Both the position numbers and the translations under genes were made by a program. A DNA stretch of 64,000 nt, taken from Ranitomeya imitator. Its lineage: Eukaryota. How positions within the stretch are numbered: the stretch's first letter is position 1; each line of letters opens with the position of its first letter. Of the stretch, positions 481-52,393 are shown piece after piece. The DNA is taken from assembly GCF_032444005.1 (NCBI RefSeq), contig NC_091291.1:101060001-101124000 (forward strand), given 5' to 3'. The notes beneath the pieces are model-generated. The model worked only from the letters and a program-made list of their open reading frames with translations. It did not search any database and was not told where the DNA came from.

Positions 481-718
481 TATGCTTTTTTGCTACTTTA
501 ATAGTATTACTACTAGAGGTAATAATTTTAGATGTGAGGGACAATTTGCTAATATTATAGATATATTATTATTATTTCTTTTGAATTTCTCAAATTTTCT
601 GTTAATAAGAATTAGAACATTTGAACATCTTTCACAGATAAAAAAAAAGATCAATAGTGAAACCATCAGTGGTCGGTGCAATGTGTGATCGGTGCAGGTC
701 CCATCTTGTGGCCGGGGG

Positions 719-880
719 TTCCCACACTCACATCTCCCCCCAGCAGCCTCTATTATCTCCTGTATTGGAGCAGATGGACACACGTCCATTGTCCCCGCTG
801 CGGTGGGATTGGAGGATGAGTGTGGGAACCTCTTGTAAGTCCGCTCTCCACACATCATTATGCAGGGAGAGGGGTATATA
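719..880 (+). promoter_or_regulatory. hes5-A promoter: distal RBPJ TTCCCACA 719-726, E-box CAGATG 771-776, ATTGG 808-812, RBPJ TGTGGGAA 821-828, cryptic partner TCTCCACA 845-852, TATATA 875-880
   Basis: Motifs read directly; same spacing upstream of genes C and D. Confidence 0.8.
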
Positions 881-957
881 GAGGGGCGGCCGCTCACTAG
901 TAGTCAGACAGCTCCTGCCCCACACAGCACAAGGCTACAGACTGCCGGACCTGCACC

Positions 958-1688
958 ATGGCCCCATGTAATATGAGGACCCCGGACCATCAGGCTGACA
1001 GCGGCCTCAGAAAGGTAAGAGCCCCCGACTAGTGACAGCGTCACCCCCATATCTCTACATGTAGACACTTATAGGAACAGGAGTCTGATGTTTACAAGTG
1101 ATCTTAGTTGTCCTCCATAGACATGGACACTGGCGCAGGGGAATAATGAGAGATTCTTCTTCTTTTCTACAGCTGAGGAAGCCGGTGATTGAGAAGATGA
1201 GGAGAGATCGGATTAACAGCAGCATTGAGCAGCTCCGCGTCTTACTGGAGAAGGAGTTTCAGAGACATCAGCTCCCCTCCAAACCGGAGAAAGCCGATAT
1301 CCTGGAGATGACGGTCACCTTCCTGCAGCGGCACATGGCGGAGAGAGGTGAGTGTCGTGTCCGCGCTCCTCACACCCCTCATGTGTTTGTTACTGAGAGC
1401 AGAGCAGCCGGCAATGGACGCTGTCACTGACATGTTGTCTTTCCTGTTCTAGATGTCACAGCCTCCAGCCAGACCCGGAGAGAAGGCTACTCCACCTGCG
1501 TCCAGGACGCCGTCACCTTCCTGACCCAGCACAAACAGGAGGAGCTCCAGATCCAGCTGCTGCAGAACCTCCCTGGGGCTCACACTGTGGTGTACAGGGC
1601 CGTATCTCCTCCTGTATCTCCTGTCTACCAGACCCCCAACAAATACAGCCCCCCAGACAGCAGCAAAACCTTGTGGAGACCCTGGTAG
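958..1688 (+). CDS. hes5: HES5-like bHLH-Orange-WRPW repressor (gene A), 155 aa; exons 958-1014, 1173-1347, 1453-1688
   Basis: GT-AG junctions with consistent phases (0 and 1); MAPCNMRTPDHQADSGLRK / [29 protein letters not shown]...[10 protein letters not shown] / EGYSTCVQDAVTFL...LWRPW-stop. Confidence 0.95.
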
Positions 1689-1719
1689 TGACTGTATCCA
1701 TTATGTGAGTGTGGACTGG

Positions 1720-2500
1720 GAGCTGTGCACCCCCATTATTCCTGAGAACTGGTAGCTGTGTACCCCTAGTATACCTGAGAGCTGTGTACCCCCATTATAC
1801 CTGAGAGCTGAGTACCCCCAGAATTCCTGAGAGCTGTGTATCCCCATTATACCTGAGAGCTGTGTACTTCCAGTATACCCAAGAGCTGTGTACTCCCATT
1901 ATACCTGAGAGCTGTGTACCCCCATTATACCTGAGAGCTGTGTACCCCCATTATACCTGAGAGCTGTGTACCCTCAGTATACCTGAGAGCTGGGAGCTGT
2001 GTACCCCAAGTATACCCGAGAGCTGTGTACCCCCATTATACCTGAGAGCTGTGTACCCCCAGTATACCTGAGAGCTGTGTACCCCCATTATACCTGAGAG
2101 CTGTGTACCCTCAGTATACCTGAGAGCTGTGTACCCCCATTATACCTGAAAGCTGTGTACCCTCAGTATACCTGAGAGCTGGGAGCTGTGTACCCCAAGT
2201 ATACCTGAGAGCTGTGTACCCCCAGTATTCCTGAGAGTTGTATACCCTCAGTATACCCGAGCGCTGTGTACCCCCAGTATTCCTGAGAGCTGTGTACCCT
2301 CAGTATACCTGAGAGCTGTGTACCCTCAGTATACCTGAGAGCTGGGAGCTGTGTACCCCAAGTATACCTGAGAGCTGTGTACCCCCAGTATTCCTGAGAG
2401 CTGTGTACCCCCAGTATACCCGAGAGCTGTGTACCCCCATTATACCCGAGAGCTGTGTACCCCCATTATACCTGAGAGCTGTGTACCCCCAATATTCCTA
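1720..2500. repeat. 26-bp minisatellite (GAGAGCTGTGTACCCCCAGTATACCT) starting about 30 bp after the hes5-A stop codon
   Basis: About 30 tandem units. Confidence 0.95.
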
Positions 2501-3510
2501 AGCGCAGGGGATGTGATGTCTTCTGTCACTAATGTCTCATGTGATGGGAGATGACGTTCCTTCTGATCTTGGTGTAATTTCTCTGTGATTTTCTCATCCA
2601 TCATATAATCTGCTGTCGGCTGCAGATCTCCTGTGTGCTCTCGGTCCTATATCCTTCTATGAAGAACAGTCCTGGTCCTATATGGACCCATTGTAGGAAT
2701 CTTCCCAGTGATACAATGTATCGGATTATATATAGTGTGTACTGGCTCTATAGAGAGTGATGTATTGTATGTAGATATCAGAGCTCCAGTGCAAAGCATT
2801 GCAGAATAATGGAGGTGAGACCTCCGGCCTGATATACACTGTAGATATTATGTATCAGTCCTGTAATACTACAGACGTCTGTATAGTAATATATACATTA
2901 TTGGATTCAGTATATAGATGTACTGTGTACAGCGCCCCCTATAGTTCACTATTATTAGTGGTAAATGTTCTGTATATTGAATATTCAGTAAATTACCAGG
3001 AGGCATATGTTCTGTGTATGATCATGATTAATGATTATAATGTAATGCTGATGTGTATTATGCAGGATGAGGTCATATACTTTGCCATAGTATACAATAT
3101 TTGTAGTAATTGCCTCCTTATAGTTCACTATTATTAGTGGTAAATGTTCTATATATTATACTGTATTATGTCCGTCTGATAAATTATCAGAATATTCTAA
3201 ATTCTATGAATTGTACATTATGTGATCTGTATTATGGATTATTATGCTCCATGGTTTTCCTATGTGGTATGCAATATTTGCATCAAATGTTAGAAAGTTA
3301 TGTATAATATACACTGTATGGTGCAATATTTGCAGTATTACATCAGTGATGTTGCGTATATTATACACTGACTGCGCGTGTCTGTATACTCTGTATACTC
3401 TTATCAGTGGACAATGTTCAGTTGTCATACATTGTGAGATAAGTTGCAATCAATAAAATAAATTATTATATATTAGTGTTGTGATGTTATTACAATGTTA
3501 TCATCATTAA

Positions 3511-4790
3511 CCCATTCCCCACCAAAATACTGGCGTTTCTCTTTGCAGAGTTCTCCTAATGACCACCTGCAGAAATGGGCCTAAGGATTAAATATATGGC
3601 TATAGTAATAAATGGGGTCAGATTGTGGGGCCGACTGGAGAGTTTAAGTTCTAGGACGCGAGCAATGAAACCTTCTCCTGTAATGGGGACAATGCCCAAC
3701 TCCCTTCTGCGAAACAGTATATTGATTATATTAATATTATTCATTATATTTCCCATAGAGTACTCCATCCTCTCCGGTGTTCACAGTAATGGGATCTAAG
3801 GGGTAGCATTTCTCCTTGTGGAGAGTGACAAGCCAGGCCTGGCAGGAGTGAGGAGACTTATATGCCATGCATGCTCCTCCTCTTCCTCTCTGAAGAAGCA
3901 ATTTGCATGGATAATGGGATCTCATGGGGATGTCAGCCATCTTTATCACACCCCCACATACTCTGTCCCTAGAGGCTAGAGTAGGGGCTCATATGCAGCA
4001 CATGTGGCTATCATCAGCCATGAGGTCATGGTAGTTATTATCCACAGGTCTGAGACAATGCTGTGATCATGCGTATGTAATAAGAAACTCACCAATCTCT
4101 ATGTGTTGGATAAATCATAGCCCTGAAAATCAGTGTTACCGGGACACTGTAATATTCTGACCCCACATACCGTGGTGTGGGGAGCATACATATGTTCATA
4201 CTATGAAATACATCAGTAGGGTAAAAATACACTTTACACGGCTGGAGAAATAATTCTTGATGCCATAGTGGCAGAAAAGGGTTTTTATTTAACAACGCGT
4301 TTGGTGTATTTTTCTATTACAAAAAAAACGTTGCTTTTGTACATTAGTTTTGGCATCAAAACAAGTTTTTTTTTAACAACGCGTTTCGTTTCCAAACTGG
4401 CATCTTTTTAAAGTACAAAAAAGTCGTTTTTTTTAATATTTGAGAAAAACACCAAATTGGCGTCAAAACGCATTATTAAATAAAAAAAAAACTGCTTCTA
4501 TTACTAGAGCAGCAAGAATTTTATTTTTTTTCCAGCCACACAGTCTACATTTTAAGGTTTTTTGTTTTTTAACCCTAGTGGGATGAAATTTTATCTGCCA
4601 CAAGGCAGCTGCAACTTTGATTTTTAAGGGGGGAGACCCTTTTTTCCCTAGGGGGTGCAGCACCATCTTTTGGACATATTTTTTCACCTGTGCTAGGGTC
4701 ACCCAATGGTTGCGTGTTCCTTTCCCTCCACAGCACCTCTTGCATGCCCACGGGCCACTAGATAATAGGAGCCCGCTGCCATATCCCAAA
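3511..4790 (-). mobile_element. Possible degenerate piggyBac-like remnant
   Basis: TTAA-CCC end at 3507-3513; minus-strand frame 4463-4789 contains HPTRVKKQKTLKCRLCG, reminiscent of a piggyBac C-terminal cysteine-rich domain; second end not found. Confidence 0.35.
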
Positions 4791-5507
4791 CTATGAAGCC
4801 GCAGATTCCTTCAGTCTATTTGATTGCATGTAAGGAGTTACAGAATTTCTTATCTCACATTGAAACGATGCAAAATAATAAAAAAGATATTTACAAGCAG
4901 TAACAAGAAAGATACAAATAATAAAACAAGTCATTTCTAAATATTTATTAATATATATTCTAATTTTTCAATAAACGTATATTCATTAAACAGCACGCTT
5001 GACATGTAATAACACATGATACAATGTATTCTACAGATATACATCATAGATGTGACATCACAATTATTAGATATTGCACCATTACATATACAGCAATAAG
5101 ACAATGCAGCGGAAGAAACCTTCTCTTACATAAGACTTGTACATATTCTACATATATAGCACAATCTATAGGGGGCATTAATTTAATATTGGTTCGAATA
5201 TACTGTATATCTGTACATGTTGTACATATCATGTACATAAGACCAGTCACAGCCAACCTCTGGCTTACCAGTTGTTGCAGAACTACAACTCCCAACATGT
5301 CATGATAGCCTGTGTAGAATAAAACATTTGATTTACATATCAAATTAAATGAATTTACATAACTCTAAACACCAGTAACTGTAAGTTCCCATAGGGACCA
5401 CTATGATACAGCATGAAAAATGCTCTCCAAATTTCAAAGACTCATTATTGAGTGCTGGAGAAAACATCCTCATAGGATATTATGAAGTCCATCAAGGTGA
5501 TCTCCCA

Positions 5508-5575
5508 CTGCCAGGGTCTCCACAAGGCTTTTCCACTGTCTGGGGGGCTGCTTGCTGGGGGTTTGGTAGACGGGG
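5508..5575 (-). pseudogene. hes5: Relic of a hes5 last exon (SPPDSGKALWRPW) with the stop mutated TAG>CAG and a 2-nt deletion relative to genes A/B
   Basis: Aligns by eye to the 3' end of exon 3 of gene A; WRPW codons at 5511-5522. Confidence 0.8.
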
Positions 5576-6010
5576 ACTGTATGTGTGTATAACCATCTAT
5601 TGGATATTCTGATATAATTCTGATACATTGATACTTACAAATATCTGTAATCACCCAGTATACTACAGATTATATTTATATATCAGGGTCCTTTTGCAGG
5701 TTTCTAGTGTTTTTTTTTTCTATTTTTTGTCATCCTTGATATTCATAGGGGGAAGCCTTATTATTACATATTGATTGATTGTTGAAAAATTGGGATTAAT
5801 GTGCCCTACTCTGCCCACAGTCATGCATGTCTTCGTGTTTTGTGTTTTTTATTTGTTTTTAAAGAGTTTTGCACTTGTTTCAATAAAGCCTTGTTGTGCT
5901 GTTTTTATGTTTGGGTGTGCACTATGATTCTATGTAGCTTTTCTTTATACAAATTCATTTTCCTTTTTTGCGCAGATTGTAGCACCCTAATATTATTTTA
6001 TGGTGCCCAC

Positions 6011-6069
6011 CTTTCTTTTTCCATTACGTGCGTGGATCATTGAGTCTGGATGAGGCTGTAAGCGGCCAT
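6011..6069 (-). pseudogene. Putative relic hes5 exon 1 (ATG GCC GCT TAC..., in-frame TGA at codon 11, ends AAAG/gtgggc)
   Basis: Lies just downstream of the copied TATA box; ATG-GCC start and AAG/GT donor like genes A/B; 59 nt, so out of phase. Confidence 0.45.
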
Positions 6070-6143
6070 CAGTCAGGGAGTGTGCAGAGGTGTCCTCTCT
6101 GCAAATGGGATATCAGTGATGTGTAGCCAGGGGGACAAACGCA

Positions 6144-6352
6144 GCCCCTCTATATACCCCTCTCCCTGCATAATGATGTGTGGAGAGCGGACTTACAAGA
6201 GGTTCCCACACTCATCCTCCAATCCCACCGCAGCGGGGACAATGGACGTGTGTCCATCTGCTCCAATACAGGAGATAATAGAGGCTGCTGGGGGGAGATG
6301 TGAGCTGGAGTGTGGGAGCCCCCGGCCACAAGATGGGACCTGCACCGACCAC
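6144..6352 (-). promoter_or_regulatory. Third copy of the hes5-A/B promoter (pseudogene promoter); 6144-6304 identical to 727-887
   Basis: Base-by-base comparison 161/161; distal RBPJ site changed to CTCCCACA. Confidence 0.9.
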
Positions 6353-6459
6353 TGGTTCTTTCCCTAATGATTTTAGTTTTAGGCCATGTGCTTACTGTCA
6401 TTGTAATGTATGTTTGAAGTAAGGACCAGGAAAAAGCAAAGGTCAAATATATCTATATA

Positions 6460-6745
6460 CAACCCCTGGCAAAAATTCTGGAATCACCGGCCTTGGAGGA
6501 TGTTCATTCAGTTGTTTAATTTTGTAGAAAAAAAGCAGATCACAGACATGGCACAAAACTAAAGCCATTTCAAATGGCAACTTTCTGGCTTTAAGAAACA
6601 CTAAAAGAAATCAAGAATATGAAATATTGTCGTCAGTAATGGTTACTTTTTTAACCAAGCATAGGGGAAAAATTATGGAATCACTCTGTAAATTTTCATA
6701 CCCAAAACTAACACCTGCATTAAATTAGATCTGCTGCTCGTTATT
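6460..6745 (+). mobile_element. Tc1/mariner left-end fragment (TA-CAACCCCTGGCAAAAATT)
   Basis: TA-flanked terminus with internal direct repeat GGCAAAAATTCTGGAATCAC / GGAAAAATTATGGAATCAC. Confidence 0.6.
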
Positions 6746-6755
6746 CTGCATCTAA

Positions 6756-6948
6756 GCAGTCATCAAAGCAAAAGGTGGCTACTTTGAAGAACCTAGAATA
6801 TAAGACATCATTTCAGTTGTTTCACACTTTTTCGTTAAGTATATAATTCCACATGTGTTAATTCATAGTTTTGATGCCTTCAGTGTGAATGTACAATTTT
6901 CATAGTCATGAAAATACAGAAAAATCTTTATATGAGAAGGTGTGTCCA
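6756..6948 (+). mobile_element. Tc1 right-end fragment, same family as 50810-52393, running into the gap
   Basis: Near-identical to about 52195-52380. Confidence 0.8.
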
Positions 6949-7598
6949 NNNNNNNNNNNNNNNNNNNNNNNNNNNNNNNNNNNNNNNNNNNNNNNNNNNN
7001 NNNNNNNNNNNNNNNNNNNNNNNNNNNNNNNNNNNNNNNNNNNNNNNNNNNNNNNNNNNNNNNNNNNNNNNNNNNNNNNNNNNNNNNNNNNNNNNNNNNN
7101 NNNNNNNNNNNNNNNNNNNNNNNNNNNNNNNNNNNNNNNNNNNNNNNNNNNNNNNNNNNNNNNNNNNNNNNNNNNNNNNNNNNNNNNNNNNNNNNNNNNN
7201 NNNNNNNNNNNNNNNNNNNNNNNNNNNNNNNNNNNNNNNNNNNNNNNNNNNNNNNNNNNNNNNNNNNNNNNNNNNNNNNNNNNNNNNNNNNNNNNNNNNN
7301 NNNNNNNNNNNNNNNNNNNNNNNNNNNNNNNNNNNNNNNNNNNNNNNNNNNNNNNNNNTTATCTTTCTATTANNNNNNNNNNNNNNNNNNNNNNNNNNNN
7401 NNNNNNNNNNNNNNNNNNNNNNNNNNNNNNNNNNNNNNNNNNNNNNNNNNNNNNNNNNNNNNNNNNNNNNNNNNNNNNNNNNNNNNNNNNNNNNNNNNNN
7501 NNNNNNNNNNNNNNNNNNNNNNNNNNNNNNNNNNNNNNNNNNNNNNNNNNNNNNNNNNNNNNNNNNNNNNNNNNNNNNNNNNNNNNNNNNNNNNNNNN
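6949..7598. other. Assembly gap (N runs 6949-7358 and 7374-7598)
   Basis: Ns in sequence. Confidence 1.
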
Positions 7599-7599
7599 N

Positions 7600-7710: not shown

Positions 7711-10044
7711 TTTTGAGGTTTGGTATTTGCCTGGGGGGCTCTGCACCCGGACTCTTTCTTTGTGGTGCTCTAATTCTCTTTTTTTCTATCTATCTGCCTA
7801 GCTATTGATCATAAATTTAATAATAACAATACTATTAGTCGCCAACATTCACTACAATGATCTTCAATCTATGGCGCTACAGCTGTTATTATACTAGTTA
7901 AGTAAATAAGGTAGCACACTGCAGCGCTAGAACATACAAACTTGAAATACGAAATTTGAACTGCATTACTGCACTAGAAATATGAAAAATGAGAGCGTTT
8001 AGCGCATAAAAATGGCCAATTTTATGTGTACCTGGTAGCCCCTTTACGGCATCTCTCTTATACCAGGTCCTAAACTTGCCTTACCTCGCTGAAAATAAAC
8101 GTCTCCATCCATTATACTAGAGCTCCATGCTGAGAGTTGCAGTTCCATGACAACTTTAGAACTCATATTGACAAGTGATTATTGAAAAAAATGCACAGCA
8201 AGGCTACCGTAATTGACAGCTATTTATTTATGTATCAACGCTTTTATCATTTAATTAGTAATAAACTATAAACTAATGTGATATGTGATAGCTGAGTATC
8301 TGGTCTCTGGAGAGAGGATGTGGTGGTGTGATAAGAGACGTCTGACATCTCGGTGACACCTCATTATCCTCAACATCAAAGGGGAAGGTGTACTGGACAG
8401 TGTCTGGGGTATATATTATTTTTGTTATTTATTTTTAAAGCACCAAAAATTACAGGCTGCACTGCTGTATACATGGTACAAGGTTTAAGTATATAACAGA
8501 AGACTTAAACACATCTATATGAGTGATAGACTGTGTCAATATAACAATGCAAGACACATATTATTATTTATTTATGTGTGGCTGGAAGTATGCAAATCGC
8601 GGAAAATCCTCTGAACATGCGGTGTGTGCAATGTGAGGATTCACAATTCTCCAGTCACATAGAGTAACTGCAGACTTGTAGCTGAACTGCTGTCAGTCAA
8701 GATATGACAGTGCCTAGTATGCACATTGAGGGGATGTAATAGTGCACCATATCACGGATGCACCAAGATGCCCCCAAATTTGCATACAAAATAAATAATT
8801 TGTCTTAACGCCAACTAAACCATTACAATCTGTATTGTTTATTTGATTTTTATAGGTTCAAAGTCCAATATAGATACCTACCGGTAAGTGTTTTCCTCAG
8901 TGTTTGGGGGGGAGCAGACTCCTTTTAAATGGTACCTGACACATCACATGACTCAAGATGCCCTCAAAATCTAGCAGCTTCATTATCATCGTTTTAATAA
9001 ATTACTAATGATTAAAAAAAAATCTAAACAAACAATGGACAGTGTTCAAGGAAACATTTTATTGCAGAGAATCCACGACAACTTTCATAAGCAAAAGCAT
9101 CTGATATTTACGGAAATACTCACTAATTTATCAGGCAAGTATAGAGATCTAGAAATATCACATCGCAAATATAAATGCGTTACTATAACACAATACACTT
9201 TAAATTATATTATAAGATATATATGACATGGTGACAATTCTTGCAAATGTTGCATACCCCCCAAAAAAATAAATATATAGTACTGACTGCAAATATTGCA
9301 CACCTTGCTATATACTGTAAGTAGCTGAACAAGTCCTTTACTAATAATATACATTGTATATAGGATTACTGCAAATATTGCAAACATAAAATAAAGTAAC
9401 AAAGTACTAAAATCCCAATGTAATGTACATGGCAGATATACATTCATATATAAAATATGATACAACTAAGGCCAATATGTGACCACACTAATCATCCATA
9501 TCATCCGATATACATGACAGCATGCTAGGACTCTATATAAAGCTGATACACGCTGAAAGTGCATATTGTTATACAGACGTCTGTAGTATTACAGGACTGA
9601 TACATAATATCTACAGTGTATATCAGGCCGGAGGTCTCACCTCCATTATTCTGCAATGTTTTGCACTGGAGCTCTGATATCTACATACAATACGTCACTC
9701 TCTATAGAGCCAGTACACACTATATATAATCCGATACATTGTATCACTGGGAAGATTCCTACAATGGCCTCAATTTATCAAAGAGATTATGCCAAAATTC
9801 TAGTGCAAATCACTTTGAAAATTTGAAAACACAAAGTTGCACAAAAACTTTGCCGGGCTTGATGAATTGGGGCCATAGTGTCCTTGTAGCACTGGGACGG
9901 TGTCTACATAGGAAAATATAGAACCAATAATATGATTGATTAGTAAATCACGTAGTAATTACATCAACTCCCATCACATGATGAGACATTAGTGACTGGC
10001 AGAAAACATCTCATCTCCTCTGGGGTGTGCTGGTATACACAACT

Positions 10045-10637
10045 CTCGGGTTTACTGGGGGTACACAGCTCTCAGGTATACTGGGGGTACACAGCTCTCA
10101 GGTATACTGGGGGTACACAGCTCTCAGGTATACTGGGGATACACAGCTCTCAGGTATACTGGGGGTACACAGCTCTCAGGTATACAGGGGGTACACAGCT
10201 CTCAGGTATACTGGGGATACACAGCTCTCAGGTATACTGGGGGTACACAGCTCCCAGCTCTCAGGTATACTGGGGGTACACAGCTCTCATGTATACTGGG
10301 GATACACAGCTCTCATGTATACTGGTGGTACACAGCTCTCAGGAATACTGGGGGTACACAGCTCCAAGTTCTTGGGTATACTGAGGGTGCACAGCTCTCG
10401 GGTATACTAGGGGTACACAGCTCTCAGTTCTCAGGTATACTGGGGGTACACAGCTCCAAGTTCTTGGGTATACTGAGGGTGCACAGCTCTCGGGTATACT
10501 AGGGGTACACAGCTCCCAGTTCTCAGGTATACTGGGGGTACACAGCTCTCAGCTCTTAGGTATGCTGAGGGTACACAGCTCTCGGGTATACTGGGGGCAC
10601 ACAGCTCTCAGGTATACTGGGGGTACACAGCTCCCAG
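10045..10637. repeat. 26-bp minisatellite 3' of hes5-B (same family as 1720-2500, shorter array)
   Basis: Tandem GGTATACTGGGGGTACACAGCTCTCA units. Confidence 0.95.
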
Positions 10638-10664
10638 TCCACACTCACATAATGGATACAGTCA

Positions 10665-11395
10665 CTACCAGGGTCTCCACAAGGTTTTGCTGCTGTCTGG
10701 GGGGCTGTATTTGTTGGGGGTCTGGTAGATAGAAGATACAGGAGGAGATACGGCCCTGTACACCACAGTGTGAGCCCCAGGGAGGTTCTGCAGCAGCTGG
10801 ATCTGGAGCTCCTCCTGTTTGTGCTGGGTCAGGAAGGTGACGGCGTCCTGGACGCAGGTGGAGTAGCCTTCTCTCCGGGCCTGGCTGGAGGCTGTGACAT
10901 CTAGAACAGGAAAGACAACATGTCAGTGACAGCGTCCATCGCCGGCTGCTCTGCTCTCAGTAAGAAACACATGAGGGGTGTGAGGAGCGCGGACACGACA
11001 CTCACCTCTCTCCGCCATGTGCCGCTGCAGGAAGGTGACCGTCATCTCCAGGATATCGGCTTTCTCCGGTTTGGAGGGGAGCTGATGTCTCTGAAACTCC
11101 TTCTCCAGTAAGACGCGGAGCTGCTCAATGCTGCTGTTAATCCGATCTCTCCTCATCTTCTCAATCACCGGCTTCCTCAGCTGTAGAAAAGAAGAAGAAT
11201 CTCTCATTATTCCCCTGCGCCAGTGTCCATGTCTATGGAGGACAACTAAGATCACTTGTAAACATCAGACTCCTGTTCCTATAAGTGTCTACATGTAGAG
11301 ATATGGGGGTGACGCTGTCACTAGTCGGGGGCTCTTACCTTTCTGAGGCCACTTTCAGCCTGATGGTCCGGGGTCCTCATATTACATGGGGCCAT
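10665..11395 (-). CDS. hes5: HES5-like repressor (gene B), 155 aa; exons 11395-11339, 11180-11006, 10900-10665
   Basis: Same exon structure as gene A; 5 nt differences in 468 nt of CDS (D14E, T85A, P134S, V135I, one silent); ends WRPW-TAG. Confidence 0.95.
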
Positions 11396-11472
11396 GGTGC
11401 AGGTCCGGCAGTCTGTAGCCTTGTGCTGTGTGGGGCAGGAGCTGTCTGACTACTAGTGAGCGGCCGCCCCTC

Positions 11473-11634
11473 TATATACCCCTCTCCCTGCATAATGATG
11501 TGTGGAGAGCGGACTTACAAGAGGTTCCCACACTCATCCTCCAATCCCACCGCAGCGGGGACAATGGACGTGTGTCCATCTGCTCCAATACAGGAGATAA
11601 TAGAGGCTGCTGGGGGGAGATGTGAGTGTGGGAA
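11473..11634 (-). promoter_or_regulatory. hes5-B promoter: TATA 11473-11478, RBPJ 11525-11532, CCAAT 11541-11545, distal RBPJ 11627-11634
   Basis: Inverted copy of the gene A promoter. Confidence 0.8.
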
Positions 11635-12864
11635 CCCCCGGCCACAAGATGGGACCTGCACCAATCACACATTGCTCAGGATGGGATTAACTAGCTGGAA
11701 TATTTATTGATTTATTGATAAAATCCACTTAAAAACAAAATTGCAGCACCCACTATGGCATTACACAATGTCACACACATTACCTATACAGCACATAAAT
11801 AAACGTTCTGACACGATAACTTGGGTGGATAAAATTGGCCACGGCCTTTAAAATTTATAATCATACAAATGCAAAATATCCATATCCAGCAGTTTGCTAC
11901 TAATAACTGCAGCTTAGCAAAAGCTCAAACCTGATAACCAAAAACCTTCTGTTCATTCAGATACCTGAAACCTCCAAGGCTGTGATAATTAACAAGGGAG
12001 GGAGGGCAGGACAGCTTTGCCAGGTAGGAGATACTGGGGGTCAAACACAGACCCCCTAGTGACACCATCCTTTTATCCATCGACCGTTCTTTGTGGATGA
12101 AAATCTGACATTTTTTGGTGTGAACTATGCATATAAGTTTTATATAGGACCCCCCTACGCTCGATAGATCATATGTACTTTGGCTGCAAACAGTTGTCAT
12201 GGCGGCCATGTTCGGCCCTCTCAGGCAGGCGGCCTTCACCTCAGACATTTTACAAGCTCCTGTCTGTGAAGGGAGCCTGACGTGTGCCTGTGAATTACAA
12301 CTCCCATCATCAAAGCCAGGAAGTGTGCCTTTAATAGTCAGCACATGGAGGAACCTGGCATTGAACATGAAAAAAACTCACTCACAATAAGAGCTCATAA
12401 CAACAAATCTGATAGACCAGATAGAGACTGAACGGGAACAGCGTGTGAGGTAAATGTATAGCACAAAGTGTTAGCAGAAGATGTGTCATTTTCAGTCACA
12501 TTACTAGTGTCTAATAATCCCAAACATCTCATTATTCTGGACCCATCAATCCCAGATTTAATACATTTTGTTGTTTTCAAGGGGTTATTGTAATACAAAG
12601 GACATTTTTCACACTTCCAAGGATAGGCGTAATTGTGTGACTGTGTGATCACTAGGGTCCCATTTCTCCCACTCCCACCAGTCATTAGAACAGCGGTCTC
12701 CAGCCCCGGTCGTGCAGTAAGGGTTCACTCACGCTGGCTTCGATTCTCTCATGCGAGCGCATCGGGCCGATTATACCAATGTCACTCTGATCAAACTCTG
12801 TCCGACCTATTGATCTTAACAGCTCATTTACATATTAAGAAAAACATGGATTCCTTACGAATAA

Positions 12865-30533: not shown

Positions 30534-33500
30534 ATGGCGCCCACCGGCACGTCTGCAGAGTCTTGCAATAATGGTCAAAAGTGCAAAAATGCCTTCAGGG
30601 TAGGTATTAGGTGATGTAAAAAAAAATCTTAAACTCACAACATAACTTGTGGATGGAATGGTCCTGTCCATTAGAGCTAGCAATCGATATATGTGTCAAT
30701 CAGGGCTTAATCGATTTTATGTATTTATTTTTTTACAGCAACTGAGAAAACCGGAGGTGGAAAAGCTGAGACGAGACAGAATTAACAGCAGCATTAGACA
30801 ACTTAGATTGCTGCTGGAGAGTGAATTTCAGAGCCATGAGCCTAACACCAAACTGGAGAAAGCCGACATTCTGGAGATGACAGTCAGTTATTTGAAAAAG
30901 CGCCACATGCTGGTGAATGGTAAGTACTGCACTGCGCACTCTTACGGTAATGGTGTAAAGTGTTCATTTATCCACTGGCGGAATCCTATCTATGTGAGGT
31001 GCATAAGTAATAGTTAGACATGAGCATTATTCGGAAAGGGGCCCAAGGGCTTCCCGCTAAGAAGACTCCGGTATTATAGAGGGCACATGTTAGGCAAAAA
31101 CACTATTATAGATTTTCAGTTGCTTCAGGTTATATCAAATTGTCAGATATGAAGCCTAGGACTGTTTTATGAAGGTTGCACTTGCATCAGGCTACCACTA
31201 TCTGGAGGTCCGGGCTATCCTTAGCTGCATAGGATGCCCATTTTATGACACCATTTATCGATCAGGATCATAGGTTCCTAATATAAGTGGGATCTGATAG
31301 GTGCCAGATTACGAAATGCTCCTGATTATCAGATGTTGGATTATTAGAATTTTGTTTAATTGACTGGAGGTTCGTGATTTTCTCAGGTGCATTGCATTGG
31401 ATACAGCCTTCGTTTGTCATTTCACAGTAAAAGCTTTATCTACAATCGTCCGGAATTATCTAAATTTATCTGAATTAATTAATCACCAATCTTAATATCT
31501 GGAACAAACATATCATTGGTACAAACTGTGCAGGCACCAGGGGCCCAAGACACAAGGGGGCCCACTTCTACCTCCAAGCCAGCAAATAGCTTCTATCACA
31601 GACACGTAAAGGGGTGAATGATGATGCGTTTTGGAATGCAAAGGGCCACAGACTTGAACAGGGGCCATTTTAGCCCAGGTCAGCCCATGCTTATTAAACT
31701 ATTCATTGGTCCAAGTATGCATGTACCTGATAGTTGCCATTGATGGACCTGATAACTTTCATATTATGAAACATTTCAGATCAGATGTCAGAATCATGGA
31801 TTTCTATGGTGCACTGTAATCATAGTGCTAAAAGTATTTGGCTCCCCTTGACCAATGCTCAAAAGCAGGGCTCCCCAACCTGTAGCTCGGGAGCCACATG
31901 TGGCTCGCGGCCCCATGAATTGTGGCTCGCGACTGTCTGTCAGCTTGATGCATTAGGTCCAAGTCTAGCAAACAGGTATGAAAAGCACATCTCAAAAGGG
32001 TGAATTTTGTGAGTAGCCCTGCACAGAAGATCAGATCTGGATGCACATTTACTGGTCTTAGGGGTTTAGAGATGTTTTAGGTATGGTACGCTGGAGGTTT
32101 GTACTACCTGTTAGAAGAGGTGCTCAAAGCTGGATGTGACAATGTGTTGGGAGAATACTGAATGGGGATATTGTGGGAACCCCTGGATCTCAGTGTACTG
32201 CTCTGGAGTGATTTCTGTGGAAAAGCTTTGGTTATCATTATACCTGTAATGGGGGCTTTGGTTGACACTACTTTGAAGGGGGTGGGAGCTGGATGTGGCT
32301 CGCGACCCTCTCGCTAAGCTGAATGTCTCAACTGAGTTAGATTGATTGCTAACGAGCTTTAACACAAAAAAAAAAAAAAAAAAGAGATCTAAGGGCTAGC
32401 CTTCTATAAATGTAGATGTAGCTTGGGGATGCATTCGTGCACTGTTATTCGTGTATTTTTTATTCAAAGTACTTTTTTTTCTAAGTACTCGGCAGTTATA
32501 ACATGGCAGTTAGACAGGGCAGGAGACAGGTAAGAAAAACTAAATCTAAACCATATTCACTTGAAACAGCACAAATACTCACCATATTTATTTGTATAAT
32601 CTATATTCTGGCTGCTGCATTCACTCACATTCACCGCCCTCGCATTAACTCTCTACACTCCATCCATATCGGCCCCTCTGTCCTTGCCTCTCCTATGTAT
32701 AGCACTCATGCTCTGTTCACATTGCTTAACAGCACAGATCCATTCAGTCCCAACATCCAACACAAGAGACGCTCTCACAAATCACTTAACCATCTGCTCA
32801 CTCTTTCGATCCTCCTTCTCCTAGTCGCTGGAGACATTTCGCCAAACCCCGGCCCCCCCATGTTATAGCCAGTCAAACCTCCCAATTGCTACACCCAGAA
32901 ACCCCTCTAACCTTATTAATATTCCCTGCATGCCTGCTGTCTCTTTCAATTGTGCCCTTTGGAATTCTCGCTCTGTGTGTAATAAACTCTCCTTCATTCA
33001 TGACTTCTTCCTTTCTAATTCTCTTAATCTCCTGGCTCTAACTGAAACCTGGATCCAGCAGTCAGACACCACCGCTGCTGCTGCTCTTTCATATGGTGGA
33101 CTACACTTTTCTCATACCCCAAGATCAGACAACAGAGCAGGTGGAGGCGTTGGTCTGCTCCTTTCACCCAAATGTACTTTCCAAGTTATCCCCCAAGTAC
33201 CCTCACTTGTCTTCCCTTCCTTTGAGGTCCATGTGGTCAGACTCTACGTCCCCTTCTCCATGCGAGTGGCGGTGGTGTATCGTCCTCCCGGCCCCTCTCA
33301 TCAGTTCCTGGATCACTTTGCCACCTGGCTTCCACACTTTCTCTCCTGTGACACCCCCACCCTTATCATGGGTGATTTCAACATCCCCATTGCCTCTCCC
33401 CTCTCCCCATCTGCTTCTCACCTTTTATCTCTATCCTCCTCTTTTGGCCTCTCGCAGCATACTAACTCTCCAACACATGAAGATGGAAACTCCCTTGACT

Positions 33501-36500
33501 TGGTCTTCTCCCGACTTTGCTCAGTGGATGACTTCACAAACTCCCCTCTCCCGCTCTCTGACCACAACCTTCTTTCATTCTCTATCAAGAACTGCCATTC
33601 TGCTCAGGTCACCCCCACTTTCCACACCTATAGAAACATACAGGCCATTAACACCCAGAAACTTATGATGAACTTGCAGTCCTCATTGGCCCCTATTTCC
33701 TCCATCTCATGTCCTGATTCTGCATTGAAGCATTACAATGAAACCCTGCAAAGTGCTCTGGATGAAGCTGCTCCTCCTATACATAAAACAACTCGGCACA
33801 GACGGCAACAACCGTGGCACACGCTGCAAACACGTTTCCTGCAGCGGTGCTCCAAGTGCGCAGAACGTCTGTGGAGAAAATCTAATCTACCCGAAGATTT
33901 CATCCATTATAAGTTCATGCTAAAGACATACAATTCTGCCCTTCACCTCTCCAAACAAACCTATTTCAACACCCTCATCACCTCCCTGTCCAATAACCCT
34001 AAACGTCTCTTTGACACGTTCCAGTCCCTACTCAACCCAAGAGAGCAGGCCCCAACAACGGATCTCCGTGCTGACGATCTGGCCAATTACTTCAAAGAAA
34101 AAATTGACCACATTCGACAGGAAATCATCTCCCAATCTCTTCATACCATGCACTGTCCTCCCTCCCCCACTGCATCTAGTTCACTCTCTGACTTTGAAGC
34201 AGTTACAGAAGAAGAAGTAAGCAGGCTCCTTGCATCTTCTCGCCCGACCACTTGCACCAGTGACCCCATTCCGTCACATCTCCTCCAGTCCCTTTCCCCG
34301 GCTATCACCTCTCACCTAACAAAAATATTCAACCTTTCCCTCACTTCCGGTATTTTTCCCTCCTCATTTAAGCATGCCATCATACATCCATTACTTAAAA
34401 AACCATCCCTCGATCAAAACTGTGCCGCTAATTATAGACCTGTCTCTAATCTTCCCTTCATCTCTAAACTCCTCGAACGCCTGGTCCACTCCCGTCTTAC
34501 CCGCTATCTCTCAGATAACTCTCTTCTCGACCCTCTTCAATCTGGCTTCCGCTCTTTACACTCTACTGAAACTGCCCTCATTAAAGTCTCTAATGACCTA
34601 CTAACAGCTAAATCTAATGGTCACTACTCCATGCTAATTCTCTTGGATCTCTCTGCAGCATTCGACACTGTGGATCATCAGCTCCTCCTCACTATGCTCC
34701 GCTCCATCGGCCTCAAGGACACCGTTCTCTCCTGGTTCTCCTCCTATCTCTCTGACCGATCCTTCACTGTATGTTTTGCTGGTTCCTCCTCCTCTCACCT
34801 TCCCCTTACTGTTGGGGTTCCTCAAGGATCAGTCCTAGGCCCCCTACTCTTCTCGTTGTATACTGCCCCTATTGGACAAACAATCAGTAGATTTGGTTTC
34901 CAGTACCATCTCTATGCTGACGACACCCAATTATACACTTCTGCTCCCGATATCACACCGACCTTTTTAGAAAACACCAGTGATTGTCTTACCGCTGTCT
35001 CTAACATCATGTCCTCCCTCTATCTGAAACTAAACCTGTCAAAAACTGAACTCCTCGTGTTCTCTCCCTCTACTAACCTACCTTTGCCTGACATTGCCAT
35101 CTCCGTGTGCGGTTCCACCATTACTCCAAAGCAACATGCCCGCTGCCTTGGGGTCATCCTTGATTCTGACCTTTCATTCACCCCCTACATCCGATCACTG
35201 GCTCGCTCTTCTTACCTGCATCTCAAAAACATTTCTAGAATTCGCCCTTTTCTTAATTTCGACTCTGCAAAAACTCTGACTGTTTCACTTATTCATTCTC
35301 GTCTGGACTATTGTAACTCTCTACTAATCGGTCTCCCTCTTGCAAAACTCTCCCCGCTCCAATCTGTCCTGAATGCTGCAGCCAGGATCATATTCCTCAC
35401 CAACCGTTACACCGATGCCTCTACCCTGTGCCAGTCATTACACTGGCTACCCATCCACTCCAGAATCCAGTACAAAACTACTACCCTCATCCACAAAGCA
35501 CTCCATGGCTCAGCACCACCCTACATCTCCTCCCTGGTATCAGTCTACCACCCTACCCGTGCCCTCCGCTCCGCTAATGACCTCAGGTTAGCATCCTCAA
35601 TAATCAGAACCTCCCACTCCCGTCTCCAAGACTTTACACGTGCTGCGCCGATTCTTTGGAATGCACTACCTAGGTTAATACGATTAATCCCCAATCCCCA
35701 CAGTTTTAAGCGTGCCCTAAAAACTCATTTGTTCAGACTGGCCTACCGCCTCAATGCATTAACCTAACGATCCCTGTGTGGCCTATTTATAATAAAAAAA
35801 AAAAAAAAAAGGTTCCTCGCATCATGTTCTCATACACTTTATGCAGTATTAGCCCTCTGTGTCTGTACTGCTACATACTTAGGCAGGTAACTGGTTCATG
35901 CAGCTTTACATGAACACCTGAGCCTTACACTATAGCTGGTCCGAATAACTAAAGCAATTGTTACCATCCACCTCTCGTGTCTCCCCTTTTCCCCATAGTT
36001 TGTAAGCTTGCGAGCAGGGCCCTCACTCCTCCTGGTATCTGTTTTGAACTGTATTTCTGTTATGCTGTAATGTCTATTGTCTGTACAAGTCCCCTCTATA
36101 ATTTGTAAAGCGCTGCGGAATATGTTGGCGCTATATAAATAAAATTATTATTATTATTATTAGAATGTGGCTCTCAAGGTCAGAAAGGTTGGGGACCACT
36201 GCTCAAAAGTATGGCTGCTGGTGCTTCTTCCACCCCTGATATTGGTGTCATGTGGCCTGCCCTACTGTAACCACATAGGGGTAGCACCTGGGGAAACTAC
36301 GAACACTGCCTTTAAGAAATTGTGCATAATTATTATTTTATCTTACGGTACTGTATAGTCTTTGCCCATGTGAATGTAAAGGATGTTGATTTTTACATAT
36401 TTTTTTGTTTTATATTTTTTTTCTTCCTATATAGCAACATCAAGCTCTACAAAAAAAACTTTCCAAGGCTACAGCCAATGTCTACAGGAGACTTTGCACT

Positions 36501-36649
36501 ATCTATCGTATCCCAGGAAAATGGACCAGGCCAATGAAAAAGTCATGCAGTATTTCAGCAGAAGCTACATAATGGGCAGCGAAGCACCTGGTGCATCACC
36601 GACCAACTCAGAGCGGACCCTGAAACATGTCATCTGGAGACCATGGTAA
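30534..36649 (+). CDS. hes5: HES5-like repressor (gene C), 153 aa; exons 30534-30599, 30739-30919, 36435-36649
   Basis: GT-AG junctions in phase; [22 protein letters not shown] / [22 protein letters not shown]...[10 protein letters not shown] / [14 protein letters not shown]...VIWRPW-stop. Confidence 0.92.
32503..32868 (+). CDS. L2 leader ORF ending in a 2A-like StopGo motif ([15 protein letters not shown], 32830-32856)
   Basis: Resembles the D(V/I)ExNPGP motif; removing one C from the C7 run at 32853-32859 fuses it in frame to ORF2. Confidence 0.75.
32930..35767 (+). CDS. L2 ORF2: apurinic endonuclease plus reverse transcriptase, 945 aa, no stops
   Basis: LWNSRSV, LTETW, GDFNI, SDH (APE); [43 protein letters not shown] (RT). 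Confidence 0.95.
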
Positions 36650-41890: not shown

Positions 41891-42795
41891 ACATGATGTG
41901 AAGACATTACAAGGTAAGTATATATTAAGATATATATTATATATTTCCATTATATTCTATACTTCAACCAGTCACTTTTTTTTATATTTCGATAAAAAAA
42001 ATAATTAAAACCTTAGAACCAATATTAAAAATAAAAATCTGAATTTATCATACATTACACTGTATAAAAATAAACTACAGATATATTTTGTAAATATAAT
42101 TTTTCATATTATTATCCTTATTATTATGAACTTTCTTGCTTCAGTGGAAGTATTCATAAAAAAAAATTCCATCCAGAGTTTATATCAGCATTTTCATTCA
42201 ACGCAAATAAACTCGCCTCCCTTTTATTTCTTTATGCAGCTACAATCGGAATGACTTTTACCATTTTTTTATACAGGGGGCTAAAAAATGTGGTAATTTC
42301 CCACCAAAGAAATCTATTGTATCATGAATTTGTAAAGGTAAATTCTGATCTAATTTCCTTGGGAACGATACTCGCTTTAATTCTCCTCCTGTTTGCCATG
42401 ATCTCATCAAAAAATAGATATCAACTTGGTAAAAAAAAAAAGTAAAACAAAAAACAAAGAGGCTTAAAGAATTAGTGAATTTTTCTTGAAGTTGTGGGAG
42501 AGACTGGGCAGTGTCTGAATAGGTTTAGACATCCTGTCTTTTGATCTTTTTGTTTCCCGCCTTGACGTGTGTCCCTATTTATGGTTGTCATTGGAATGTC
42601 TCTGATTCCAAACATTAGGCTGTGTCGGTTTCTCTCTTGGAGCCATTAACACTCTCGCCATTTCTGGCTTATTCAATTGCCCCTCTGTTATTTGGCACGT
42701 ACCCTCCACCTGTTCATCTGTCATTATTCCAAGGTCATTCACAGTCAATTTAGCGCAGCAGTAATTTAAGCTTCTATTGTGGCCACCAGTTAACA

Positions 42796-42870
42796 ATTGG
42801 TAGCCGAGTGTGGGAATGAGCGGAGAGGTTGGGGCTCAGCAACTGTGGCCTTCAAGGACGCCATTATACA
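42796..42870 (+). promoter_or_regulatory. Orphan hes5-type module: ATTGG 42796-42800, N8, TGTGGGAA 42809-42816, TATA-like ATTATACA at 42863
   Basis: Same ATTGG-N8-RBPJ spacing as all four genes; no bHLH exon found downstream. Confidence 0.6.
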
Positions 42871-50809: not shown

Positions 50810-52393
50810 CAGTACAGACCAAAAGTTTGGACACACCTTCTCATTTAAAGATTTTTCTGTATTTTCATGACTATGAAAATTGTACATTCACACTGAAGGC
50901 ATCAAAACAATGAATTAACACATGTGGAATTATATACTTAACAAAAAACTGTGGAACAACTGAAAAAATGTCTTATATTCTAGGTTCTTCAAAGTAGCCA
51001 CCTTTTGCTTTGATAACTGCTTTGCACACTCTTGGCATTCTCTTGATGAGCTTCAAGAGGTAGTCACCCGCAATCGTTTTCACTTCACAGGTGTTCCCTG
51101 TCAGGTTTAATAAGTGGGATTTCTTGCCTTATAAATGGAGTTGGGACCATCAGTTGTGTTGTGCAGAAGTCTGGTGGATACACAGCTGATAGTCCTACTG
51201 AATAGATTGTTAGAATTTGTATTATGGCAAGAAAAAAGCAGCTAAGTAAAGAAAAATGAGTGGCCATCATTACTTTAAGAAATAAAGTTCAGTCAGTCCA
51301 AAAAATTGGGAAAACTTTGAAAGTGTCCCCAAGTGTGGTGGCAAAAACCATCAAGCGCTACAAAGAAACTGACTCACATGAGGACCTCCCCAGGAAAGGA
51401 AGACCAAGAGTCACCTCTGCTTCTGATGATAATTTTGCAGGTTAACAGCAGCTCAGATTAGAGACCAGGTCAATGCCACACAGAGTTCTAGCAGCAGATA
51501 CATCTCTACAACAACAGTTAAGAGGAGACTTTGTGCAGCAGGCCTTCATGGTAAAATAGCTGCTAGGAAACCACTGCTAAGGACAGGCAACAAGCAGAAG
51601 AGACTTGTTTGGGCTAAAGAACACAAGGAATGCACATTAGACTAGTGGAAATCTGTGCTTTGGTCTGATGAGTCCAAATTTGAGATCTTTGGTTCCAACC
51701 ACCGTGTCTTTGTGCAGAAAAGGTGAACGGATGGACTCTACATGTCTGGTTCCCACCGTGAAGCATGGAGGAGGAGGTGTGATGGTGTGGGGGTGCTTTG
51801 CTGGTGACACTGTTGGGGATTTATTCAAAATTGAAGGCATACTGAACCAGCATGGCTACCACAGCATTTTGCAGCGGCATGCTATTCCATCCGGTTTGCG
51901 TTTAGTTGGACCATCATTTATTTTCAACAGGACAATGACCCCAAACACATCTCCAGGCTGTGTAAGGGCTATTTGACCAAGAAGGAGAGTGATGGGGTGC
52001 TACACCAGATGACCTGACCTCCACAGTCACCAGACCTGAACCCAATCGAGATGTTTGGGATGAGCTGGACCGCAGAGTGAAGGCAAAAGGGCCAACAAGT
52101 GCTAAGCATCTCTGGGAACTCCTTCAAGATTGTTGGAAGACCATTCCCGGTGACTACCTCTTGAAGCTCATCAAGAAAATGTCAAGAGTGTGCAAAGCAG
52201 TCATCAAAGCAAAAGGTGGCTACTTTGAAGAACCTAGAATATAAGACGTAATTTCAGTTGTTTCACACTTTTTTTTTAAGTATATCATTCCACATCTGTT
52301 AATTCATAGTCTTGATGCCTTCAGTGTGAATGTACAATCTTCATAGTCATGAAAAAATACAGAAAAATTTGTCCAAACTTTTGGTCTGTACTG
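50810..52393 (+). mobile_element. Full-length Tc1 element with decayed transposase (start about 51224)
   Basis: TA TSD; TIR CAGTACAGACCAAAAGTTTGGACA; VKHGGGGVMVWGCF motif; multiple stops and frameshifts. Confidence 0.92.

What the first reader, a model, noticed from the sequence alone, without database searches (positions are those of the whole stretch)
5508..6352. A dead hes5 gene with a perfectly preserved promoter aimed antisense at gene A
Seen: on the minus strand a 161-bp core promoter (6144-6304) is identical to that of gene A, including NF-Y, RBPJ and TATA. The gene behind it is destroyed: a probable exon 1 with an in-frame stop, no recognisable bHLH exon, and a diverged, frameshifted WRPW exon with TAG>CAG. 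Pristine promoter and decayed body differ sharply in apparent age. Inference: either recent gene conversion from A/B refreshed only the promoter, or selection keeps it as a Notch-responsive ncRNA promoter or enhancer. It points toward the 3' end of gene A about 3.6 kb away, so a Notch-induced transcript could be convergent or antisense to hes5-A.
Basis: partly seen in the sequence, partly recalled or inferred. Interest (0 to 1): 0.7.

Follow-up and report, generated by a model that had tools for sequence, protein, structure and literature searches.

The report
Dead hes5 copy with homogenised promoter
A decayed copy of the Notch target gene hes5 keeps a promoter letter-for-letter identical to its two working neighbours, most likely because the neighbours keep overwriting it by gene conversion; no RNA from it was found, so it is a tidy but fairly ordinary case of concerted evolution in a frog-type hes5 cluster.

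Summary
On the minus strand, 6144-6304 (161 nt) is identical to the promoters of two intact, convergent hes5 twins: A (+, 958-1688) and B (-, 11395-10668). This tract carries two CCAAT boxes, one TGTGGGAA RBPJ site and the TATA box. Behind it lie an exon-1-like stub with a stop after 10 codons, 435 nt of unique filler with no bHLH or Orange coding, and the last ~70 nt of the WRPW exon. That exon remnant is 84.5% identical to A, has a 2-nt deletion, and reads CAG where A has TAG.

New evidence:
- DNA contigs of a second organism (~4.4% diverged in the pseudogene body) show the same junction at 6143/6144. They also show a single unbranched 137-nt promoter contig with no differences. The arrangement is therefore real and is not a recent one-off copy.
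- Two RNA-like runs cover gene A's 3'UTR but give no contig on the pseudogene's exon-1 stub, filler or 3' region, apart from one unexplained small signal over the WRPW remnant.
- Six poly(A) hexamers lie between its predicted start and gene A's end.
- Its only substitution near the core destroys the distal RBPJ site.

Best reading (0.55): an unprocessed pseudogene whose promoter stays in the A/B gene-conversion pool. A selected regulatory role (0.26) is not excluded. The scan noted related orphan or chimeric hes5 modules elsewhere in this genome.

The parts
6144..6304 (-). Promoter core, 161 nt identical to genes A (727-887) and B (11466-11626). It holds two reverse CCAAT boxes (6267-6263, 6223-6219), the proximal RBPJ site TGTGGGAA (6210-6203), TATATA (6156-6151) and 4 intact CpGs.
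   Evidence: The organism B contig 6144-6280 has 0 differences.
6305..6375 (-). Older, imperfect upstream part of the promoter homology. It has a 6-nt insertion CTCCAG (6310-6305), a T>C change at 6318 that turns the distal RBPJ site TTCCCACA into CTCCCACA, and a 16-nt indel against A. Homology to A and B ends here, at the same place where the A/B homology ends (A 678).
6070..6143 (-). Pseudogene-specific sequence from 8 nt after the TATA box. The predicted transcription start is about 6126-6120. It has no similarity to the 5'UTR of A or B.
   Evidence: DNA contigs of both organisms end at 6173, which puts the branch point at 6143/6144.
6011..6069 (-). Exon-1-like stub: ATG 6069-6067, in-frame TGA 6039-6037, donor AAAG|GT at 6011|6010. 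It is 59 nt long against 57 nt in A. TATA to ATG is 87 nt against 83 nt in A. It resembles paralogue D's start region, not A's.
5575..6010 (-). A-rich single-copy filler where the intron, bHLH exon and Orange coding should be. No HLH or Orange similarity. The first minus-strand AATAAA is at 5853-5848.
   Evidence: Single-copy depth in X1 and X3.
5506..5574 (-). Remnant of the last ~70 nt of the WRPW exon, 84.5% identical to A 1620-1690. It has a 2-nt deletion (frameshift), WRPW codons at 5522-5511, and CAG at 5510-5508 in place of the stop.
4925..5505 (-). Possible former 3'UTR, down to the minus-strand AATAAA at 4949-4944. No similarity to A's 3'UTR.
   Evidence: No RNA-like contig except a 32-nt dispersed repeat at 5268-5299.
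685..890 (+). Promoter of intact gene A, a likely conversion donor. Gene A: exon 1 958-1014, exon 2 1173-1347, exon 3 1453-1688, AATAAA at 3452.
11463..11668 (-). Promoter of intact gene B, the second likely donor, in the same orientation as the pseudogene and 5.3 kb from it.

Best explanation
This is an unprocessed (duplication-derived) hes5 pseudogene lying between two convergent, near-identical working hes5 genes.

Its coding body was lost by deletion or replacement and decay. Only an exon-1-like stub and the last ~70 nt of the WRPW exon remain.

Its ~210-nt promoter module is still long and similar enough to pair with the promoters of A and B, 5.3 kb away on either side. Recurrent non-allelic gene conversion from those selected promoters therefore keeps overwriting it. 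This is the same process that holds A and B at 99.3% identity through their introns.

The identical tract (161 nt) ends downstream where homology itself ends, 8 nt after the TATA box. Upstream it ends inside older, imperfect homology.

The relic is transcriptionally silent, or gives only a rare, short, unstable RNA. It does not reach gene A.

Shown: the anatomy, the identity, its presence in a second organism, and the lack of RNA contigs. Inferred: conversion as the maintaining force, and silence.
For: - 161/161 identity against 84.5% in the exon-3 remnant, Fisher p = 1e-6. At 15% divergence the chance of such a run is 3e-12.
- A and B are 99.3% identical over 1074 nt, with 0 and 2 mismatches in the 100-nt windows that hold their two introns, and with block-like homology ends. 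This shows strong ongoing homogenisation at this locus.
- The tract length of 161-212 nt fits the ~250-nt mean tract of non-allelic conversion (bioRxiv 10.1101/135152).
- Upstream of the identical core the homology is imperfect: one substitution and two indels in ~70 nt. This is what an old homology block with a younger converted centre should look like.
- Promoters of paralogues C and D share only CCAAT, RBPJ and TATA with A. Identity is therefore not what selection alone produces in this family.
- Organism B (run X3, separate study) has a 2264-nt contig over 3879-6173 with 102 substitutions and 65 gap letters that ends at 6173. It also has an unbranched 137-nt contig over 6144-6280 with 0 differences, at depth 30.7 against 6.8-12.9 for single-copy neighbours. 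The pseudogene copy of organism B therefore flows into the same shared promoter sequence.
- RNA-like runs X7 and X8 cover A's 3'UTR (2560-3430; X7 contig depths 25-116). They have no contig on 5605-6329 or 3575-5169.
- The single substitution next to the core destroys one of the two consensus RBPJ sites. Two high-affinity CSL sites are reported as essential in Hes5 promoters (PMC3201213).
Against: - Downstream, identity runs right up to the homology break, with no diverged homologous flank. A conversion tract is usually flanked by such a flank on both sides.
- The promoter homology is only ~210-230 nt, which is short for efficient ectopic pairing.
- Zero differences in 137 nt between two organisms that differ by 4.4% next door is also what direct selection on this copy would give. 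The chance is 0.002 if neutral and unconverted, and about 0.05 at the 2.1% seen in A's 3'UTR.
- The genome-average conversion rate estimated for humans would not hold 161 nt identical. A locally much higher rate has to be assumed, though A/B identity suggests one.
- The RNA evidence comes from contigs of two runs of guessed type and unknown tissue or stage. It cannot show absence.
- X7 has a small unexplained signal in bin 5460-5604.
Confidence: 0.55

Rival explanations
1. The promoter relic is kept by selection as a working Notch-responsive element. It could be an RBPJ/NF-Y landing pad or shadow enhancer for A and/or B, a decoy promoter, or the promoter of a short unstable non-coding RNA. Conversion may help but is not the reason it persists.
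For: - The core is identical in two organisms whose flanking pseudogene DNA differs by 4.4% (p about 0.002 under neutrality without conversion).
- All core motifs and all 4 CpGs are intact.
- The same CCAAT -67 / RBPJ -54 / TATA 0 grammar is found in every working paralogue.
- A second orphan hes5-type module exists at 42790-42870.
- The element sits midway between the convergent twins.
Against: - No RNA contig in two RNA-like runs where A is well covered.
- The distal consensus RBPJ site is lost.
- Conversion from two selected donors explains the cross-organism identity without any function.
- Selection does not normally freeze every one of 161 letters. Paralogues C and D keep only the motifs.
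- No Rfam family is hosted in the putative transcript.
Confidence: 0.26
2. A Notch-induced transcript from this promoter runs convergent or antisense into gene A and regulates it.
For: Geometry only. The promoter points at A's 3' end, about 2.7 kb away, and has the same core as A.
Against: - No RNA-like contig anywhere between 3575 and 5169 or between 5605 and 6329.
- Six minus-strand AATAAA/ATTAAA hexamers lie on the way, the first 267 nt from the predicted start.
- A's own transcript ends near 3430-3475, so the two do not overlap.
Confidence: 0.04
3. A single recent neutral event in this lineage, either one conversion or one small duplication of the promoter fragment, that has simply not had time to decay.
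For: Perfect identity and a sharp downstream break 8 nt after the TATA box.
Against: Organism B, 4.4% diverged in the adjoining DNA, has the same break at 6143/6144 and the same core. A single event before that split, followed by neutral drift, would give about 6 differences in 137 nt (p = 0.002).

A fragment landing by chance at the right distance upstream of an exon-1-like ATG (87 nt against 83 nt in A) is unlikely.
Confidence: 0.1
4. Assembly artefact: a promoter piece of A or B was wrongly stitched in near the N runs at 6949-7599.
For: Three identical copies within 11 kb, N runs 600 nt upstream, and high-copy repeats from 6458 onward.
Against: - Short-read contigs bridge both junctions in X1 (5507-6173 and 6317-6482).
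- The downstream junction is also bridged in the independent X3 (3879-6173).
- The copy has private features, the 6-nt insertion and T>C at 6318, that A and B lack.
Confidence: 0.02

Closest known systems
Expanded hes5 gene clusters of frogs (Kuretani et al. 2021, PMC8320183)
   Same: Tandem or inverted arrays of many small three-exon bHLH-Orange-WRPW genes. The paper draws pseudogenes and 'partial' hes genes inside such clusters. Genes A, B, C and D here fit that picture.
   Different: The paper does not use the words promoter, conversion or concerted at all (0 occurrences). A promoter-only homogenised relic is not described there. I did not determine the species of this window.
Non-allelic gene conversion / concerted evolution of close duplicates (Harpak et al. 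2017, bioRxiv 10.1101/135152). From my own knowledge: the human fetal globin pair and palindrome arms of sex chromosomes.
   Same: A short tract (161-212 nt against a mean of ~250 nt) of perfect identity between copies a few kb apart, embedded in older divergence. The donors are under selection and the acceptor is a pseudogene. A and B form an inverted pair kept at 99.3%.
   Different: Only the promoter is in the conversion pool, and the rest of the acceptor gene is gone. There is no diverged homologous flank on the downstream side. The required rate must be far above the human genome average.
Canonical vertebrate Hes5 proximal promoter: TATA, CCAAT and two high-affinity CSL/RBPJ sites (Vilas-Boas et al. 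2011, PMC3201213)
   Same: CCAAT, TGTGGGAA and TATA at fixed spacing. A and B have two consensus RBPJ sites.
   Different: The relic keeps only the proximal site, because the distal one is mutated (CTCCCACA). The two sites in A and B are ~100 nt apart, so they are not a classical closely paired site.
Pseudogene-derived or relic-promoter non-coding transcripts (general class, my own knowledge)
   Same: An intact core promoter in front of a dead coding body.
   Different: No transcript was detected here. No hosted small RNA was found.

Membership tests
Hes5 / E(spl)-type bHLH-Orange-WRPW gene (as a working member) | bHLH domain exon | tested here: not met
   Gene A exon 2 hits Pfam HLH at E = 3.5e-12. 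tblastn and blastn find nothing between 6010 and 5575.
Hes5 / E(spl)-type bHLH-Orange-WRPW gene (as a working member) | Orange domain | tested here: not met
   Only the last ~23 codons of exon 3 remain. ORFs over the remnant hit no Pfam family.
Hes5 / E(spl)-type bHLH-Orange-WRPW gene (as a working member) | C-terminal WRPW followed by a stop | tested here: not met
   WRPW codons are present at 5522-5511. A 2-nt deletion lies upstream of them, and CAG replaces the stop.
hes5 pseudogene of the unprocessed (duplicated) kind | Retains non-transcribed promoter and exon/intron layout in a paralogue cluster, with no poly(A) tract or target-site duplication | tested here: met
   There are 212 nt of promoter homology, an exon-1-like stub with a GT donor at the family's usual spacing, and an exon-3 tail in colinear order. 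The relic lies between paralogues A and B.
Non-allelic gene-conversion tract | Identity much higher than in the rest of the same paralogue pair | tested here: met
   0 differences in 164 nt against 11 in 71, p = 1e-6.
Non-allelic gene-conversion tract | Tract flanked on both sides by older, diverged homology | tested here: inconclusive
   Upstream yes (6305-6375: one substitution, two indels). Downstream no, since homology stops at 6143.
Non-allelic gene-conversion tract | Copies co-vary: the acceptor tracks donor changes across species | not testable with these tools
   Only one other organism was seen, and it has no change in the core. Assemblies of several relatives are needed.
Notch-responsive Hes5 promoter | CCAAT, high-affinity RBPJ site(s) and TATA in the family's spacing | tested here: met
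   CCAAT at -67, TGTGGGAA at -54 and TATA at 0, as in A, B, C and D. The distal RBPJ site is lost.
Notch-responsive Hes5 promoter | Drives a transcript | tested here: not met
   No contig on 5605-6329 in RNA-like runs X7 and X8, which do cover gene A's 3'UTR. Contigs cannot prove absence, and the run type is a guess.

The most novel reading that the evidence does not exclude
The promoter relic is a selected, free-standing Notch-responsive module: an RBPJ/NF-Y platform or shadow enhancer placed between the convergent hes5 twins. It has outlived its gene. Together with the orphan module at 42790-42870, it would show that frog hes5 clusters recycle dead genes' promoters as cluster-level regulatory elements.
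Probability: 0.2. Interest if true: 0.55.

Novelty: new member of a known kind. Interest (0 to 1): 0.3.

Why it matters
The locus is a clean natural example of gene conversion keeping one short module of a dead gene 'young' while the rest decays. This matters in three ways.
- For annotation: a perfect Notch promoter here does not mark a gene.
- For mapping ChIP, ATAC or CAGE reads in hes5 clusters: three identical 161-nt copies sit within 11 kb.
- For dating duplicates: the promoter and the body give very different ages.

If the relic turned out to be bound and active, it would be a handle on how the oscillating, Notch-driven hes5 twins are co-regulated.

Tried and rejected
- **A/B-type exon 1.** Local and global alignment of 6000-6143 with A's 5'UTR and exon 1 is no better than shuffles. 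True exon 1s of A, C and D are themselves barely alignable. Only a weak match to D's start region was found (20 of 1000).
- **Hidden bHLH or Orange coding or A-like 3'UTR in the filler.** None found.
- **Hosted small RNA.** Rfam at E<=1 gives only far-sub-threshold plant miRNA and bacterial sRNA noise.
- **Palindrome centre.** The relic lies near the midpoint of the A/B inverted pair. The spacer, however, holds high-copy repeats and N runs of unknown true length, and the only 'inner' inverted match (3909-3980 against 8299-8369) lies in a high-copy repeat. I treat the position as coincidence.
- **Exact-product look-up of the 69-aa ORF over the WRPW remnant.** Not on record.
- **The sigma-70 promoter scan** is irrelevant to a eukaryote.

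Full report
**Setting**

The window carries a frog-type hes5 cluster. Exon-by-exon tblastn with the peptides of the first gene finds four genes.
- Gene A (+): exon 1 958-1014, exon 2 1173-1347, exon 3 1453-1688, ending in WRPW and TAG.
- Gene B (-): 11395-10668.
- Gene C: bHLH exon 30742-30909.
- Gene D: 60132-61346.

A's exon 2 is a Pfam HLH domain (E = 3.5e-12). Its exon 3 gives a weak Hairy_orange hit (E = 0.02, below the curated cut-off).

A and B are convergent inverted twins. They are 99.3% identical over 1074 nt, both introns included. Their homology ends sharply at A 678 and A 2892. Each has its own 26-nt tandem array in the 3'UTR. Expanded hes5 clusters with pseudogenes and partial genes are known in frogs (PMC8320183).

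Base by base, 6144-6304 on the minus strand equals A 727-887 and B 11466-11626. That is 161 nt, and the first private base is 6143.

Homology continues upstream to about 6375. It has a 6-nt insertion (6310-6305), one T>C change (6318) and a 16-nt indel.

The identical tract holds two reverse CCAAT boxes, TGTGGGAA at -54 and the TATA box. This is the spacing shared by A, B, C and D.

The T>C at 6318 changes the distal consensus RBPJ site of A and B (TTCCCACA) to CTCCCACA. The relic therefore keeps one of two sites. Two high-affinity CSL sites are reported as essential for Hes5 promoters (PMC3201213).

Downstream, similarity to A and B stops 8 nt after the TATA box.

Behind the promoter lie three pieces.
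- An ATG (6069-6067), a TGA ten codons later, and an AAAG|GT donor at 6011|6010. The spacings match the family: TATA to ATG is 87 nt against 83 in A, and the coding stub is 59 nt against 57.
- 435 nt of A-rich single-copy filler with no bHLH or Orange similarity.
- The last ~70 nt of exon 3 (5574-5506), 84.5% identical to A. It has a 2-nt deletion, intact WRPW codons, and CAG in place of TAG.

**A mosaic, not one age**

The promoter shows 0 differences in 164 nt and the exon-3 tail 11 in 71 (Fisher p = 1e-6). The 5'UTR and exon-1 region cannot be aligned to A at all (432 of 1000 shuffles reach its score).

True exon 1s of A, C and D are themselves hardly alignable. The stub matches D's start region weakly (20 of 1000). 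It is therefore probably a real hes5 exon 1, but not of the A/B type.

Patchy homogenisation seems to be the rule in this cluster. A and B have block-like homology.

**Evidence from public runs**

I laid 2560-6900 on four runs of Logan contigs.

X1 (DNA, organism A, possibly the assembled sample):
- Contigs 5507-6173 and 6317-6482 bridge both junctions of the promoter copy.

X3 (DNA, organism B, another study):
- A 2264-nt contig covers 3879-6173 with 102 substitutions and 65 gap letters, about 4.4% substitution divergence. It ends at exactly the same base as the X1 contig.
- A 137-nt contig covers 6144-6280 with no difference, at depth 30.7 against 6.8-12.9 for neighbouring single-copy contigs.

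These contigs appear to be non-branching paths built from 31-letter words. That is my reading: the run index uses 31-letter words, and the contig ends fit it exactly. On this reading, an end at 6173 and a start at 6144 place the branch at 6143/6144. In organism B, too, the pseudogene body then flows into a promoter sequence shared without variation by all connected copies.

Three conclusions follow.
- The arrangement is real.
- The break after the TATA box predates the split of the two organisms.
- The identity is not a private, very recent event. Under neutrality without further conversion, about 6 differences would be expected in 137 nt (p = 0.002). At the 2.1% divergence of A's 3'UTR, p is about 0.05.

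X7 and X8 behave like RNA. They cover A's 3'UTR from 2560 to 3430 (X7) or 3377 (X8), X7 at contig depths of 25-116. They have nothing on the single-copy intergenic DNA. They give no contig on 5605-6329 (exon-1 stub, filler, promoter) or on 3575-5169.

Two small signals need comment.
- A 32-nt piece at 5268-5299 sits inside unrelated contigs, so it is a dispersed repeat.
- X7 shows mean depth 8.9 in bin 5460-5604. I take this for a short cross-laid piece of an A/B-type exon-3 contig, because 5506-5531 is 24/26 identical to A. I cannot prove it.

Their RNA nature is a guess from the coverage pattern, and contigs cannot show absence.

**Can it act antisense to A?**

A's transcript runs to at least 3430 and has AATAAA at 3452. 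The relic's predicted start is about 6120, so the gap is about 2.7 kb.

Six minus-strand poly(A) hexamers lie in that gap, the first only 267 nt from the predicted start. No RNA-like contig lies there. No Rfam family is hosted.

**Mechanism**

The simplest account is concerted evolution. A and B are visibly homogenised, introns included. The relic's ~210-nt promoter module lies 5.3 kb from each. It is the only part of the relic still similar enough to pair, so it stays in the same conversion pool, while the short exon-3 tail has escaped.

The tract size fits the ~250-nt mean of non-allelic conversion (10.1101/135152).

Because A's and B's promoters are under selection, conversion biased by two donors against one acceptor drags the relic along in both organisms.

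There are weak points.
- There is no diverged homologous flank downstream.
- The homology is short.
- The conversion rate must be well above the human average. With 0.7% divergence between A and B, the expected number of differences in 161 nt is about 1, so zero is unremarkable if the relic shares their regime.

Direct selection on the relic as an RBPJ/NF-Y platform, enhancer or decoy predicts the same sequence pattern. It stays open at roughly one chance in four. The lost distal RBPJ site and the missing RNA speak mildly against it.

**Verdict**

This is a new member of a known kind: a duplicated pseudogene with a conversion-maintained promoter in a known expanded gene cluster. It is of modest interest, mainly as a caution for annotation and read mapping, and as a testable candidate regulatory relic.

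The N runs at 6949-7358 and 7373-7599 were left untouched.

Noticed in passing
window 678-2892 (+) and 9563-11675 (-): Genes A and B are convergent inverted twins, 99.3% identical including both introns. Their homology ends sharply. 2500-2687 and everything beyond 2892 (including A's poly(A) signal at 3452) are unrelated between them, so the twins have different 3' ends.
   Followed up: partly
window 1754-2499 and 10036-10637; also 1-477: 26-nt tandem arrays fill the 3'UTRs of A (28 copies) and B (about 21 copies), with different higher-order structure. A separate 31-nt array (15 copies) lies just upstream of A's promoter.
   Followed up: partly
window 42790-42870 (+): Orphan hes5-type module: ATTGG, then GTGTGGGAA, then 46 nt to a degenerate TATA (ATTATACA). 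tblastn finds no hes5 exon nearby.
   Followed up: partly
window 30742-30909 and 36431-36646: Gene C's bHLH exon and the nearest WRPW-exon hit are 5.5 kb apart. In between lies a strongly C-rich stretch (GC skew -0.25 to -0.43 at 32-36 kb) with no tandem repeat. Either the intron is very large for this family or these are two separate gene fragments.
   Followed up: no
window 3720-4009 and 6458-6900: Very high-copy dispersed repeats (summed word depth 1e4-1e6 in both DNA runs) with sharp borders near 3824-3879, 6458, 6686 and 6754. The second begins only about 100 nt upstream of the relic's promoter homology.
   Followed up: no
window 6754-6948, 50828-51022, 52195-52368: An element with ~235-nt terminal inverted repeats (50847-52370). 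One arm copy abuts the N run at 6949.
   Followed up: no
window 5268-5299: A 32-nt motif (…gcagaactacaactcccaacatg) is embedded in unrelated RNA-like contigs of X7 and X8, so it is a transcribed dispersed repeat, not expression of this locus.
   Followed up: no
window 6185-6329 (run X1): Summed depth is about 149 against about 9 for single-copy DNA in organism A. This hints at more than three copies of the A/B-type promoter in that genome, presumably in hes5 copies outside the window.
   Followed up: no
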